Source of the DNA: Zygophlyctis sp. KS116 | Lineage: Eukaryota > Fungi > Chytridiomycota | NCBI GenBank assembly: GCA_054661495.1 | Contig: BAAFSQ010000183.1 | Span: 1-20,187 of the forward strand | Reading direction: 5' to 3' | DNA: 20,187 bases | Shown: one piece after another, positions 10,055-16,768 of the stretch | Position numbering within the stretch: position 1 is the first letter of the stretch | Layout: each line of letters starts with the position of its first letter | Program-made: the position numbers and the translations under genes | The notes under the pieces: model-generated | Database searches by the model: none | What the model was told of the DNA's origin: nothing | What the model saw: only the letters and a program-made list of their open reading frames with translations

Positions 10055-10828
10055 ATGATTTTACTCACCATGGTATCTTTCCTCTCCTATTCATGTCTAC
10101 ATTTTGTGTCTGCACTTGCCTTTAGTAGATATAGTAAGAGACTAAAGACTCTATCCAGTGATGATAGAATCTATTTGGCTGAAAAGTAACTTAACTCTAC
10201 TTATTCTAGGATTTGCTCTTCGGTCAATGCATTGATAGTCGGCTATACAGGACTATCGTTGCTAATATTCAATGATGTTTTTGAAGATCCATGGGATAGC
10301 TTTCCCAGTCAGTTAGAGGTTCTGTACCCATTATACACTGGATATTGTTTGTATGATATGATTACCATGGCGTACCAAACTCAGCATTGGTCAATGTGGC
10401 TACATCACATACTGGGAGTAGCTGGATCTATTCTAACATTTTTTGGAAGAACTGGGGCATATTATTCAACTTGGTTCATGATCACTGAGACGACTGCAGT
10501 TTTTGACAATGCCAACTGGTACTTTAAAATATTATATATGCCTGATTTGGACACTTTATCAAAGCTGAAATGGAATCAGTTTTTAACAGTCACTAGAGCT
10601 TTATCATTTGTTATTACTAGACTCCCGATTGGTCCGTATAGTTTGTATAGAAGTAGTTTCAAGTTCAAAGATGACAAGGGACTCTTAAATGAATGGCTCT
10701 CACTTCCATTCTTCATATCTATTCCTGGATCAATGATTTTATTCTTGTTTACGTTTCTCAATACTGCCTGGACACTTGTCCTTTTAAAGAAGGCAATTGA
10801 TCGATTCAAGATCAAGAAAGTGGCTTAA
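10055..10828 (+). CDS. TLC (TRAM/LAG1/CLN8) domain membrane protein, TLCD4/TMEM56-like (249 aa)
   Basis: join(10055..10185,10210..10828), with a 24-nt intron at 10186-10209. Motifs KICSSVNAL, TGYCLYD, WLHH, ETTAVFDNANW, FVITR and LNTAW. Confidence 0.85.
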
Positions 10829-11189
10829 TTTGATTTAAACAGCAAAAGACCTAAAAAGTGACCACATAAAATAGCTATTAGAAATCCAGCGTTTCCAGTG
10901 ATTATGATTAAGATTAGTAGATACTCGAGTAATTTAATTGAAGTCTTGAGTAATGCATTTTTAACAATCAGCATCTCCTTTTTATAAACTCCTTTTAATG
11001 TTGGTTTTAAGAGTGAAGCTCTTGGAACATTGATTGAAGATAATACTTGATAACCAATTGCGATTACAAATACAAAAATTAAAAATCCAAAATATTCACC
11101 ATAAGTATGAGGAACCCATCCCGAGAATAATAATTCTTGTCTTTATGATTACAAACTCTCTCTTACCTCCATCCAAAGTGAAGGCTCAT
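10825..11189 (-). CDS. Ctr/SLC31 copper-transporter family homolog, minimal (112 aa), MxxxM replaced by IxxxI; not in the ORF track
   Basis: Exons 11189..11167 and 11140..10825, with a 26-nt GT-AG intron at 11141-11166 (gtaaga…aaag). Translation: MSLHFGWRQELLFSGWVPHTYGEYFGFLIFVFVIAIGYQVLSSINVPRASLLKPTLKGVYKKEMLIVKNALLKTSIKLLEYLLILIIITGNAGFLIAILCGHFLGLLLFKSN. It has the LLFxGW motif before TM1, three TM helices, TxN after TM2 and GxxxG in TM3. Confidence 0.85.
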
Positions 11190-11275: not shown

Positions 11276-11722
11276 TCAAAACGGAGCTCTACCAATGATA
11301 TTTCCCTGAGGCCAATAATGACAAGTCACTATTTCACAGTTTTTACGAGGATTGACACTCTTTGCACAACCAATCTTTCTAGTATCTTTCCAAACCAGTT
11401 GGGTAAAGTGATTCAAGATTCCTCTTCTCCAAGAGACTCTCTCCTTGTACCATAAAGAAACAGCATCTCTAAATGAAAATGGTGATGATCTTCCCGTCAT
11501 ATACAAGTTTTCTCCGACTCCACTTTTACCTGAATGTTTTAGAATACAACCAGCGTCACTCAAAGATTTAGAGACTGCATAAGCCGATGCTGCCAATTTA
11601 TTATCCCATGATACCGGACCCACTCCAACCAATTGTCTAGCTTTATTAGTTTCCCTTAATGATCCAAAAATATGCTTTACAGCCATGATTGATGCAATCC
11701 AGAAAAAAAAGATGATTTTCAT
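11276..11722 (-). CDS. Secreted CAP/SCP (PR-1/Pry-like) protein (148 aa)
   Basis: Hydrophobic N-terminus; motifs WDNKLA, HS…GENLY, AVSLWYKE, HFTQLVWKDTRKIGCA and CHYWPQGN. Intronless. Confidence 0.92.
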   Translation of the reverse strand: MKIIFFFWIASIMAVKHIFGSLRETNKARQLVGVGPVSWDNKLAASAYAVSKSLSDAGCILKHSGKSGVGENLYMTGRSSPFSFRDAVSLWYKERVSWRRGILNHFTQLVWKDTRKIGCAKSVNPRKNCEIVTCHYWPQGNIIGRAPF

Positions 11723-12146
11723 TTCTTGTCCAATGTTACTACCCTAGGCTTGCCGCTGACGGACCCGATCTCTCTCTTGTTTTTTCTGCTTGTCCGGTTC
11801 TAAAACAGCAAAAAAGTTCAAATTTTTATCCGCAGTGCTTATAAAAGGGAAATTTTTACTAAATTTTTCATGATCCAGAATTCCTGAATCGAGCTCTGTA
11901 TGACCTTGCCTGTCATTTGTCTAGGGTACTATAAAATCTGAAATCTACAATCTACAATGGACAGATTACAGGTGGGGTGGTAAAGTAGGTCAGTGTCCAG
12001 GGTACTTTGGAGACAAACTGAAAGAATTCAGCGATTAAATTCTAGATGAATGCATGATTATTAAATACAAGAATTAAATATTATTAATAAATTTAAATTC
12101 ATTTTTTGAGTCTTGAGATTTTACTTTTAGAATTTCTTGAAAAAAA

Positions 12147-14877: not shown

Positions 14878-16768
14878 CTATAATAATGGTTCTGTTCCAT
14901 TCCAATCGATTCCAGATGCTGGCCATTTAGTCTTGATGCAGTTTTCAATAGGTGATATGAGCTCTGGCGAATGGTAATTATTGTGTCCAAAATTTGGAGA
15001 AAGCGACAATCGAATTTCATGCTGCTGATTAGCTAGGCCGTCATAATAAAATAAATCAAATGTGGTGTTTGAGCTGGCAGGAATATGTTTTAAACTGAAT
15101 ATAATAGTATAATGAGATTCTGAACATACAACCCAAACAGGATATTTTGGGGACTTGCAATATTCACCCACTTTCAAATTTTGATAATGCTCGAAAAGAG
15201 ACAATTGTCCAAACAAAGGCTGTGAATGGATTCCTTTGATAATTTTAGGAGGATCTCCACCAAGATCAAGGTTTCCATCATGTAAATTGGATACGGCCAT
15301 CCCCATCAAGATTAAATTCACCATTTCTTGAGTGCAGTAGCTGTGCTTTCCCATTAAACGCCCATCCTTTTCATCCATATCATTACGTACGTTTTCTATC
15401 CCTCGAGAAAGAATAACAGAATACAAAAACTGTATGATGCCATTTGTGCGGCGAGAATTGATCATAAACTATTTATTAGTAAGTTTATAAGCTATTTTTA
15501 CCTGACTTTGTGTAGCTTCTATAAAATCTCTTAGAACATTAGTGTCAGTAAATTCGTGCAATTCTAGGCCCAAAAGAGATCCTGGCCCATTTGATCGAGA
15601 GCTATTTTGTCTGCTGGTTAATAAAAACAAATTTACACAACAAATATGACTTTTTTTGTCAACTTGCTAGCTTGAGTAAGTATCTCAACCATCGCATCAA
15701 ATAAAGCATTTCTGGCTTGAGCCTTATTTGGTCGTAATCTATTCAAACTATAAAATTAATAATAGCGATAAATACGATATTCCATGGTTTTGAGCATCAA
15801 AATGCAAATGCTTTACTACAAATGCCTGTACAGCGGCCAAAAGTCCACATGGTCCACCTTTTAATTGGTTTAATCCATATCTAAGCTCTTCTTCTTCCCT
15901 AAAAACAAATCCCTTCCCAGCCCATTCTTCTCCAAATGTTGCTTTTCCTTTAAACGGAAATATTACTGAATTCAAGTCTTGAAGTATTTGGGAATTGATT
16001 GGAATTCCACGACTAAACGCCCAAGTTGAAAGATTAGAAATTGGAACTGATATTTCATCATCAGAGTCAAAATCATCTGCATTAAAATCATCTATAACAA
16101 GTTCCGGTTGTCGATGAGCAGATGAAGCTCTTTTAATTCGCGGCTGCGGTGTTTGTACAGGCCTTGAAATAGCACTTGGGTTGGATGTACTAAAAGATCC
16201 CAATATTGGAGCGTTTTCATTCAAATCGACATACTTCTTGGGAGTATCTTCCCATCCTTTTGAGACCTTTTTAATAGATGATTTTCTAGAGTTTGCGAGT
16301 ACTGGCTGTATAATTTCTCCATTTCCTAACTTGTCCGATGTGTCCGATAAGATATTCATATCCTTATTTATTTTGTTTGATAACAATTTTTGTACGATAA
16401 TCTCTAAAAATGGTACTTTTTGATTATCTAATGATTAAATTGCTATTATACCTAATGATTTGTCTATAATATTCTCCAGTCCCAATAGATCAAAAAGTTC
16501 TGAACGATCGTCAATCCTAGTTTCTTTAATCTATGATATGAGTTTAATTTTCACACACCAAAATTTCCTCTTTAGCTAGCGTTTCCAGAGTCTTTCGACA
16601 GCCTAAACAAAGTAAATACTCGCGTATCAATGCCAATGACAAATCAGTAATGCTAACTTTTAAATGATCTTTTTCATTTTTTGCCGAATGGATTGGTCTA
16701 GATGGAGAAACAGGGGATATTTGACTAGTAAAAGACTGTCTAGTATCATAAATCTTGGATGATCGCAT
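14878..16768 (-). CDS. MINDY4: MINDY3/4-family deubiquitinase, MINDY4 (FAM188B)-like (583 aa)
   Basis: Introns at 16531-16558, 16428-16451, 15748-15775, 15611-15636 and 15469-15501. Catalytic motifs QLKGGPCGLLAAVQA and CSESHYTIIF, plus HSYCTQEMVNL, YYDGLANQ and IDWNGTEPLL. The N-terminal LisH-like LIREYL…RKTL segment resembles MINDY4 rather than MINDY3. Confidence 0.85.

What the first reader, a model, noticed from the sequence alone, without database searches (positions are those of the whole stretch)
10825..11189. Hidden minimal Ctr copper-transporter homolog that has lost its MxxxM selectivity filter (IxxxI)
Seen: an apparently intergenic stretch splices (26-nt intron) into an intact 112-aa, 3-TM protein with Ctr hallmarks (LLFSGW, TxN, TM3 GxxxG). 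TM2 reads YLLILIIITGN where the family has YLLMLxxMTFN, and both Met codons are ATC (10914-10912 and 10902-10900). There is no Met/His-rich ectodomain and no C-terminal Cys/His motif. Established: the TM2 methionines form the Cu(I) filter of Ctr trimers, and in S. pombe Ctr4/Ctr5 act as a heteromer in which the Ctr5 motif is dispensable. Inference: two parallel M-to-I changes with an intact frame, intron and oligomerisation motif suggest a selected pseudo-transporter (regulatory or scaffold subunit of a heterotrimer) or a channel with a different substrate.
Basis: partly seen in the sequence, partly recalled or inferred. Interest (0 to 1): 0.8.

Follow-up and report, generated by a model that had tools for sequence, protein, structure and literature searches.

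The report
Copper channel relative lacking copper filter
An uncultured lake chytrid fungus keeps, under selection, a tiny relative of the Ctr copper-uptake channel that has lost every residue known to bind copper, so it probably no longer carries copper; a similar case is known in plants, and what such proteins do is untested.

Summary
On the minus strand, exon 1 (11189-11167), a 26-nt GT-AG intron (11166-11141) and exon 2 (11140-10825) encode a 112-aa, three-helix Ctr-family protein. Support: Pfam PF04145 E 8e-13; AlphaFold pLDDT 85; Ctr1 crystal structure Z 11.7. Both TM2 filter methionines are Ile (ATC, ATC), and two independent lake metagenomes agree. There is no Met-rich ectodomain and no Cys/His tail.

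It is not decaying. Relatives at 58-64% identity keep I/V at both sites, with dN/dS about 0.14-0.24 (dS saturated). An intronless ortholog has the same N-terminus, which supports the splice.

The gene sits in a conserved CAP-Ctr-TLC slot. In related uncultured lineages that slot holds a canonical MxxxM mini-Ctr (two lineages), a Met-less one (FxxxV), or a tandem Met-less plus MxxxM pair. All five Met-less copies also lack the His/Cys tail.

The genome has only one other Ctr, a canonical CTRA-type importer. The most likely reading is a copper-blind Ctr-fold subunit, regulatory or repurposed. The heteromer idea is untested. Arabidopsis COPT4 is an independent precedent, so this is a new variant of a known kind, of moderate interest.

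The parts
11167..11189 (-). Exon 1: ATG plus 7 codons and 2 nt of a split Arg codon (reads MSLHFGW + R).
   Evidence: It is the first ATG after the in-frame TAG at 11237-11235. The same 8 residues open the intronless ortholog P0001 in L005.
11141..11166 (-). 26-nt GT-AG intron, phase 2.
Evidence: Without splicing, an in-frame TAA follows at once. Splicing restores the frame. The other Ctr gene of this genome has a 28-nt intron. No RNA read across the junction was obtained.
10825..11140 (-). Exon 2: 104 codons plus a TAA stop. It carries TM1, the cytosolic loop, TM2 and TM3.
   Evidence: Pfam Ctr E 8e-13. AlphaFold model pLDDT 85.3 with helices 13-35, 48-80 and 84-101. Ctr1 6m98 Z 11.7, rmsd 2.3 A over 101 residues. 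A metatranscriptome contig covers 10844-11125.
10900..10914 (-). TM2 filter position: I-L-I-I-I, where the family has M-x-x-x-M. Both Met codons are ATC.
   Evidence: Of the other 100 aligned Ctr relatives, 96 have Met at each of the two columns. Contigs X2 and X3 show no difference here.
10849..10863 (-). TM3 GxxxG motif (G-H-F-L-G), with a His that is invariant in this clade.
   Evidence: Gly is found at these two columns in 98 and 95 of the other 100 relatives. His at the second position occurs only in this clade and two other sequences.
10924..10926 (-). Glu codon one helical turn before the first Ile. It replaces the family's conserved TM2 Gly.
   Evidence: 83 of 100 relatives have Gly here. 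Glu occurs only in the window protein, P0001 and P0002.
11276..11722 (-). Upstream neighbour on the same strand: a CAP/PR-1 domain gene (synteny anchor).
   Evidence: Pfam CAP E 2.7e-19. The same neighbour is present in L007-L010.
10232..10828 (+). Convergent neighbour: last exon of a TLC-domain gene (synteny anchor). Its stop codon overlaps the Ctr stop codon by 2 nt.
   Evidence: Pfam TLC E 4.7e-14. Sequence. The same convergent neighbour is present in L005 and L007-L010.

Best explanation
This is a genuine, selectively maintained gene for a Ctr-fold membrane protein in an uncultured freshwater chytrid.

Origin: it descends from a minimal, ectodomain-less Ctr copper transporter that occupies the same CAP-Ctr-TLC slot in related lineages.

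What it lost: all three classes of Cu(I)-handling residues are gone. These are the two TM2 Met rings (now Ile), any Met/His-rich ectodomain, and the cytosolic His/Cys tail.

What it kept: the three-helix fold, the tight TM2-TM3 hairpin (TxN) and the TM3 GxxxG packing motif used for trimer assembly.

Inferred mechanism: it still oligomerises but cannot pass Cu(I) through a thioether filter. It most likely acts as a copper-blind subunit or trimer that modulates the cell's single canonical CTRA-type Ctr importer, or that serves a repurposed, copper-independent membrane role.

Status of each step: homology, fold, residue losses, selection and synteny are shown. Loss of transport, oligomerisation and the regulatory role are inferred.
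For: Family and fold:
- Pfam Ctr 49.6 bits.
- The model has 3 helices, pLDDT 85.
- Ctr1 crystal structures are the top two hits, Z 11.7 and 11.4, with the next hit at 7.8.
- The two Ile align to the two filter Met.

Rarity: of the 146 real Ctr relatives fetched, 142 read MxxxM and only four (P0001, P0002, P0003, P0009) lack Met.

Selection:
- P0001 (VxxxV, 58% identity) and P0002 (IxxxI, 64%) are orthologs.
- dN/dS is 0.135-0.24, with dN about 0.35 and dS above 1.5.
- The one population SNP in the gene is synonymous.
- The gene appears in a metatranscriptome contig.

Splice: intronless P0001 begins with the same 8 residues.

Synteny: CAP-Ctr-TLC is shared with L005 and L007-L010.

Correlated loss: all five Met-less copies end without His or Cys. 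All Met-bearing copies in the slot keep His, and three of them end in HC, HHC or HQC.

Repertoire: only two Ctr loci exist in the 12.7-Mb assembly. The other has a Cys/Met-rich ectodomain, MLISM in TM2 and a terminal CC.

Established knowledge:
- The TM2 MX3M motif is essential for transport and GX3G is needed for trimer assembly (PMC2915924; PMC4039008).
- M150 and M154 bind Cu(I) in the crystal structure (PMC12731240).
Against: - No transport, localisation or interaction data exist.
- No trimer or heterotrimer model could be made with these tools.
- The RNA contig does not cross the intron, and contigs in an RNA library cannot rule out DNA carry-over.
- dS is saturated, so the dN/dS values are rough.
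- The candidate partner is only 29% identical.
- In the window lineage the tandem MxxxM mini-Ctr seen in L007 is absent, which argues against an obligate pairing with that copy.
- In relative L006 the gene lacks its first ~28 codons and abuts a MINDY gene. If that contig is not chimeric, the gene is dispensable or breaking down there.
- A clade-invariant Glu and a clade-invariant His inside TM2 and TM3 could mark a new activity rather than a dead pore.
Confidence: 0.55

Rival explanations
1. Repurposed channel. The trimer has a remodelled outer pore (Ile/Val rings, a new Glu ring one turn below, His in TM3, and TFN changed to TGN) and conducts or senses something other than Cu(I), acting as a homotrimer without any canonical Ctr partner.
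For: - Five changes in the TM2-TM3 hairpin are all fixed in the three orthologs: G72E, M76I/V, M80I/V, F82G and L94H (exon-2 numbering).
- Glu at the conserved Gly column is unique to this clade among 101 sequences.
- The gene persists as the only mini-Ctr in the slot in the window, L005 and L008.
Against: - Only three orthologs are available, and about 37% of all columns are invariant among them, so the Glu and His conservation is weak statistically.
- The other Met-less copies (P0003, P0009) lack the Glu and, where the column is covered, the His.
- No substrate is suggested by any tool.
- Whether Glu and His face the pore could not be checked, because no model coordinates or multimer were available.
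Confidence: 0.2
2. It is still a copper transporter. In this fast-evolving mini-Ctr group the Met rings are not strictly needed, and Cu passes by other ligands, such as the conserved His of the HFGW block.
For: - Met loss is seen in three lineages of the same slot, which could mean the motif is under weaker constraint here.
- The N-terminal His is kept in all copies.
Against: - The TM2 Met motif is reported as essential in yeast, human and plant Ctr proteins (PMC4039008; PMC2915924).
- Ile, Val and Phe cannot ligate Cu(I).
- The His/Cys exit tail is lost together with Met in all five copies. That pattern fits abandonment of copper handling.
Confidence: 0.15
3. It is a decaying or functionless relic of a mini-Ctr gene that merely has not yet acquired a stop codon.
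For: - Copper ligands are lost.
- The mini-Ctr evolves faster than its neighbours. For example, L009 vs L010 is CAP 73%, TLC 55%, Ctr 39%.
- The L006 copy is 5'-truncated.
Against: - The ORFs are intact at saturated synonymous divergence, with dN/dS 0.14-0.24.
- The splice site and start codon are kept.
- Family-invariant Asn, Gly and Tyr residues are kept.
- The fast rate is shared by Met-bearing copies, so it is not specific to Met loss.
- The population SNP is synonymous.
Confidence: 0.07

Closest known systems
Ctr/COPT copper transporter family (Pfam PF04145; human CTR1, yeast Ctr1/Ctr3; salmon Ctr1 structures 6M97/6M98)
   Same: - Significant Pfam match.
- Three-helix fold with Z 11.7 to 6M98.
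- Shares the LLFxxW block before TM1, the short TM2-TM3 hairpin with invariant Asn, and the GxxxG motif in TM3.
   Different: - Both TM2 filter Met are Ile.
- There is no Met/His ectodomain and no Cys/His tail.
- The conserved TM2 Gly is Glu, and TFN reads TGN.
Arabidopsis COPT4
   Same: [quoted passage not shown]
   Different: - It is a plant protein that arose independently.
- It was not retrieved among the relatives here.
- I did not compare the sequences directly, and nothing is known about whether its changes match Ile/Val plus tail loss.
Minimal MxxxM Ctr proteins of the same chytrid CAP-Ctr-TLC slot (P0004/P0023, P0006, P0019/P0033); nearest named relatives by profile are plant COPT5-type short Ctr proteins
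   Same: - Same genomic slot and same size class (109-134 aa).
- Same HFGW-LLF start with almost no ectodomain.
- They fall in one clade with 83/85 support.
   Different: - They keep MxxxM and a His-containing tail, three of them ending in HC, HHC or HQC.
- They are only 33-35% identical to the window protein.
Heteromeric or helper Ctr subunits: S. pombe Ctr4-Ctr5 (2:1) and rice COPT6 as cofactor for COPT2/3/4
   Same: They are precedents for Ctr paralogs that work only in mixed complexes or that help partners reach the membrane (PMC2915924; PMC3103425).
   Different: - Those helpers belong to families described as carrying the MxxxM motif.
- No interaction data exist for the chytrid protein.
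CTRA-CTR importers of chytrids, green algae and Amoebozoa
   Same: The genome's other Ctr (contig C59) has a signal-peptide-like start, a Cys/Met-rich N-terminal region, MxxxM and a terminal CC. This matches the description of the CTRA-CTR subfamily (10.1101/2023.10.19.563170).
   Different: - The window protein has none of these additions and is 29% identical over the membrane core.
- The CTRA assignment of the C59 ectodomain rests on its motifs only; Pfam gave no domain.

Membership tests
Ctr copper transporter family (PF04145 / functional Ctr) | Sequence match to the family profile above the curated cut-off | tested here: met
   49.6 bits against a cut-off of 25.3, E 8e-13, using exon 2 alone.
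Ctr copper transporter family (PF04145 / functional Ctr) | Three transmembrane helices with the Ctr1 fold | tested here: met
   The AlphaFold model has pLDDT 85.3 and three helices. 6m98 scores Z 11.7 with rmsd 2.3 A over 101 aa, and 6m97 scores Z 11.4. Foldseek TM-scores are 0.71-0.75.
Ctr copper transporter family (PF04145 / functional Ctr) | MxxxM Cu(I) filter in TM2 | tested here: not met
   The motif reads IxxxI, both codons ATC. Two metagenome contigs agree. The protein is therefore a homolog of the family, not a canonical Cu(I) transporter.
Ctr copper transporter family (PF04145 / functional Ctr) | GxxxG in TM3, 12 residues after the TM2 motif | tested here: met
   G-H-F-L-G lies with the family's usual x12 spacing from the second filter position.
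Ctr copper transporter family (PF04145 / functional Ctr) | Met- and/or His-rich extracellular N-terminus | tested here: not met
   Only 8 residues precede the conserved block, and they hold one Met (the start) and one His.
Ctr copper transporter family (PF04145 / functional Ctr) | Cys/His motif in the cytosolic C-terminus (common but not universal) | tested here: not met
   The protein ends KSN three residues after TM3.
Ctr copper transporter family (PF04145 / functional Ctr) | Trimeric assembly and Cu(I) uptake | not testable with these tools
   No multimer prediction and no experiment were available.
Met-less Ctr paralogs (COPT4-like) | Ctr homolog lacking the essential TM2 Met residues | tested here: met
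   for this protein. The statement about COPT4 comes from PMC4859090.
Met-less Ctr paralogs (COPT4-like) | Common descent with plant COPT4 | not tested
   COPT4 was not among the sequences retrieved. The chytrid clade nests among chytrid-type mini-Ctr proteins, and plant COPT5-like sequences were used as the outgroup. Independent origin is therefore inferred.
Heteromeric Ctr complexes (Ctr4-Ctr5 type) | Physical association with, and dependence on, a second Ctr paralog | not testable with these tools
   A single candidate partner exists on contig C59. A tandem Met-less plus MxxxM pair is seen only in relative L007.

The most novel reading that the evidence does not exclude
The Ile/Val-lined Ctr trimer, with its clade-specific Glu ring one turn below the former filter and a His in TM3, is a repurposed channel or sensor for a substrate other than Cu(I). 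This would be a new activity built on the Ctr fold. It would have either evolved repeatedly in lake chytrids or been inherited from an old tandem duplicate.
Probability: 0.1. Interest if true: 0.75.

Novelty: new variant of a known kind. Interest (0 to 1): 0.42.

Why it matters
The TM2 Met-x3-Met filter is treated as the signature of Ctr copper channels. Natural copies without it are rare and unexplained; plant COPT4 is one.

Here a Met-less copy is shown to be old, under purifying selection, and a positional ortholog of canonical mini-Ctr genes. It has also lost its copper exit tail, and in one relative it sits in tandem with a canonical copy.

That provides a clean natural set for asking what a copper-blind Ctr fold does: regulator, scaffold or new channel. 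The set consists of Met-bearing and Met-less proteins of about 110-135 aa from one genomic slot. The question can be tested with simple yeast complementation and co-expression assays.

The organism is uncultured and the functional readings are untested, so the value at present is as a lead rather than a discovery.

Tried and rejected
- **Word-index protein search with exon 2:** no hit. The exhaustive representative search was needed to find relatives.
- **JGI metagenome scan with the three-ortholog alignment:** 598 pattern matches, none a relative.
- **Degenerate DNA pattern for the GHFLGLL(M/L)F block in metagenome contigs:** All were chance matches by tblastn.
- **Resolving one versus several Met losses:** the mini-Ctr clade is unresolved inside. 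The AU test does not reject Met-less monophyly (p 0.47), so both histories stay open.
- **Faster evolution after Met loss:** I first suspected this and then rejected it. Met-bearing slot orthologs diverge just as fast (L009 vs L010: Ctr 39% against CAP 73%).
- **Ciliate genetic code:** considered because of the tiny introns, then rejected. TAA and TGA close long ORFs, and the best named hits of the mitochondrial HSP70 are all Chytridiomycota.
- **RNA proof of splicing:** the only RNA contig lies inside exon 2.
- **Pore orientation of Glu and His:** this could not be assessed. Model coordinates are not exposed and no multimer prediction is offered.

Full report
**Observation**

- The ATG at 11189-11187 is the first one after an in-frame TAG at 11237-11235.
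- Exon 1 (11189-11167) reads MSLHFGW plus two bases of an Arg codon.
- A 26-nt GTAAGA...AAG intron (11166-11141) follows. Exon 2 (11140-10825) adds 104 codons and a TAA stop.
- Without splicing, exon 1 runs into TAA at once, and the exon-2 frame is closed upstream by TAA at 11145-11143.
All searches used exon 2 by reference (window:10828-11139:-). Exon 1 is too short to search on its own.
- Residue numbers below are exon-2 numbers; add 8 for the full-length protein.

**Family and fold**

- Exon 2 alone scores 49.6 bits (E 8e-13, cut-off 25.3) on Pfam Ctr PF04145.
- phmmer against PDB sequences finds only salmon Ctr1. It aligns I76 and I80 to the two filter methionines.
- An AlphaFold2 model built on 101 aligned relatives has mean pLDDT 85.3 and three helices at 13-35, 48-80 and 84-101.
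- The two Ctr1 crystal entries are the top Foldseek hits, with TM-scores 0.71-0.75 normalised to the query. On re-alignment they score Z 11.7 and 11.4, rmsd 2.3-2.5 A over 101-103 residues. The next chain scores 7.8.
- Both filter codons are ATC.
- GxxxG is present as GHFLG and the family-invariant Asn is present in TGN.
- There is no Met/His ectodomain, and the protein ends KSN.

**Is the sequence right, and is it expressed?**

- The stretch is found in freshwater and lake metagenomes from 14 studies.
- Contigs from two independent runs (X2, X3) span the whole gene with no difference at either ATC codon. A third run (X4) has a gap there.
- The only variant inside the gene, 11017 A>T, is synonymous. 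Across the three neighbouring ORFs, 11 of 12 variants are synonymous.
- A freshwater metatranscriptome (X11) has a 282-nt contig at 10844-11125, wholly inside exon 2, plus contigs inside the two neighbour genes.
- This is compatible with transcription. It does not cross the intron, and because it is a contig it cannot exclude DNA carry-over.

**Organism**

- The assembly is 12.7 Mb in 1175 contigs.
- A 493-aa exon of its mitochondrial HSP70 has its best named hits exclusively in Chytridiomycota at 82-85% identity. These include Gorgonomyces, Polyrhizophydium, Homolaphlyctis and Batrachochytrium. Unnamed metagenome proteins reach 95%.
- This agrees with earlier notes of the scan that call it a lake chytrid.

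**Relatives**

- The word-index search found nothing. The exhaustive search of 1.84 billion representatives found 22 hits, of which two were close.
- P0001 is 109 aa and 58% identical. It reads VxxxV at the filter.
  - Its gene in L005 has no intron and opens with the same eight residues, MSLHFGWR. This is strong indirect support for the 26-nt splice.
- P0002 is 85 aa and 64% identical. It reads IxxxI.
- Codon comparison gives dN about 0.35, dS above 1.5 (saturated) and dN/dS 0.135-0.24 in all pairs where it could be computed.
- Intact frames at that divergence rule out a recent pseudogene.
- More distant Met-less relatives exist. P0003 reads IxxxV. P0009 reads FxxxV and has a 40-nt intron after NAG, which restores a GVFCG motif and a short tail.

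**Synteny: the main new result**

- In the window the order is CAP-domain gene (11276-11722, minus), Ctr, then a convergent TLC-domain gene (10232-10828, plus). COG5 lies further along.
- The same CAP-Ctr-TLC order is found on metagenome contigs from related organisms.

| Locus | Ctr in the slot | TM2 motif | Tail after TM3 |
|---|---|---|---|
| Window | single | IxxxI | KSN |
| L005 | P0001, single | VxxxV | none |
| L006 | P0002, 5'-truncated | IxxxI | QIS |
| L007 | P0003 plus P0023, in tandem | IxxxV and MxxxM | SRDL; RRHDYERF |
| L008 | P0009, single | FxxxV | RI |
| L009 | P0006, single | MxxxM | His-rich, ends HC |
| L010 | P0033, single | MxxxM | His-rich, ends HHC |

- The window gene is therefore the positional ortholog of a canonical, ectodomain-less mini-Ctr.
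- All five Met-less copies end within seven residues of TM3 and have no His or Cys in that tail. Every Met-bearing slot copy keeps His in its tail, and three end in HC, HHC or HQC.
- Loss of the pore ligands and loss of the exit ligands therefore go together.

**History**

- A maximum-likelihood tree groups all slot proteins (support 83/85) and groups the window protein with P0001 and P0002 (100/99). It does not resolve the deeper order.
- An AU test does not reject a single Met-less clade (p 0.47).
- Two histories remain open. One is an old tandem duplication, preserved in L007, followed by differential loss. The other is repeated Met loss.
- I first suspected faster evolution after Met loss. 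The data do not support it, because the mini-Ctr evolves faster than its neighbours in all lineages:
  - L009 vs L010, both MxxxM: CAP 73%, TLC 55%, Ctr 39%.
  - Window vs L010: CAP 60%, TLC 48%, Ctr 33%.

**Repertoire in this genome**

- The Pfam profile and the mini-Ctr profile each find only two Ctr loci in the assembly.
- The second, on contig C59, has the following features:
  - a hydrophobic N-terminus;
  - a Cys/Met-rich region of about 180 residues;
  - a 28-nt intron;
  - a membrane core with MLISM, GxxxG and a terminal CC.
- This matches the CTRA-CTR importers described for chytrids, green algae and Amoebozoa (10.1101/2023.10.19.563170).
- It is 29% identical to the window protein over the core.

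**Clade-specific changes**

- Besides the two Met, the window protein, P0001 and P0002 share three further changes:
  - Glu at a TM2 position where 83 of 100 relatives have Gly. It lies one helical turn before the first filter position, so by periodicity it is on the same face.
  - Gly in place of the usual aromatic residue of TFN.
  - His inside GxxxG.
- With only three orthologs, and 37% of columns invariant among them, this is suggestive only.

**Mechanism**

- Established knowledge:
  - The TM2 MX3M motif is essential for Cu transport in yeast, human and plant Ctr proteins.
  - The two Met form the Cu(I)-binding triads in the crystal structure.
  - GX3G supports trimer assembly.
  - The Cys/His tail receives copper (PMC2915924; PMC4039008; PMC12731240).
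- From this I infer that the protein still folds and probably still oligomerises, but cannot conduct Cu(I) in the canonical way.
- Most likely reading (about 0.55): a copper-blind subunit or trimer kept for a modulatory or repurposed role.
- Heteromeric Ctr complexes have precedent. S. pombe Ctr4:Ctr5 assembles 2:1, and rice COPT6 acts as a localisation cofactor. Mammalian CTR2 regulates CTR1 processing.
- Nothing here tests interaction.
- Rivals and their weights:
  - a repurposed channel, 0.2;
  - residual copper transport through other ligands, 0.15;
  - a functionless relic, 0.07.

**Comparison and novelty**

- By homology and fold this is a Ctr-family protein. By the functional definition it fails on the MxxxM filter, the ectodomain and the tail. 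I therefore file it as a degenerate derivative of a Ctr transporter, not as a copper transporter.
- A Met-less Ctr paralog of unknown role is already on record in Arabidopsis (COPT4; PMC4859090). A phrase search of the paper library for Ctr proteins lacking MxxxM returned nothing.
- What is new here:
  - a fungal (chytrid) clade of such proteins;
  - evidence for purifying selection on them;
  - positional orthology to canonical mini-Ctr genes;
  - correlated loss of the tail;
  - a tandem Met-less plus Met-bearing pair in one lineage.
- I rate this a new variant of a known kind, of moderate interest.

**Limits**

- Read evidence comes from assembled contigs, not raw reads.
- Splicing is not seen directly in RNA.
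- Only three close orthologs are available, one of them 5'-truncated.
- All relatives come from unnamed metagenome contigs.
- No multimer modelling was possible, and there are no experiments.

Noticed in passing
window 10825-10828: The convergent TLC gene (+) and the Ctr gene (-) share 2 nt of their stop codons inside a TTAA, so their 3' UTRs must overlap completely. In relative L005 the called genes (64-393 plus, 390-854 minus) overlap in the same way.
   Followed up: partly
L006:28-927, compared with window 14881-15465 and 10825-11189: In a relative, the last exon of a MINDY-3/4 deubiquitinase gene (77% identical to the window's) lies 55 nt upstream of a Ctr copy that lacks its first ~28 codons. 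In the window about 3.7 kb, including the CAP gene, separates the two. This is either a real deletion that truncates the gene or a chimeric metagenome contig.
   Followed up: partly
L007:1045-1912: A tandem pair of mini-Ctr genes sits between CAP and TLC in a more distant relative, one IxxxV and one MxxxM, separated by 88 nt. It could be the ancestral arrangement or a lineage-specific duplication.
   Followed up: partly
window 11141-11166; L001 about 1811-1838 (contig C59); L005:64-393: The two Ctr paralogs of this genome have tiny introns (26 and 28 nt) two codons apart and in different phases, just after the HFGW/FHSG block. The close ortholog in L005 has no intron there. This points to recent intron gain, loss or sliding.
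   Followed up: partly
window 11568-11616: A 49-nt piece inside the CAP gene also matches separate 44-51 kb contigs in two metagenomes at high depth, probably a paralogous CAP gene of the same organism.
   Followed up: no
L009:545-1606: In one relative the CAP gene upstream of the Ctr slot is called as a 353-aa LysM plus CAP fusion, whereas the window's CAP ORF is 148 aa.
   Followed up: no
window 11925-11952: A cluster of indels (+3 and +7 nt) and four substitutions in one lake population (X3) lies in the stretch upstream of the CAP gene. It is the most variable spot of the 3 kb examined.
   Followed up: no
window 14881-16386: The MINDY-3/4 deubiquitinase gene is split over at least two ORFs on the minus strand, consistent with the tiny-intron gene structure of this genome.
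   Followed up: no
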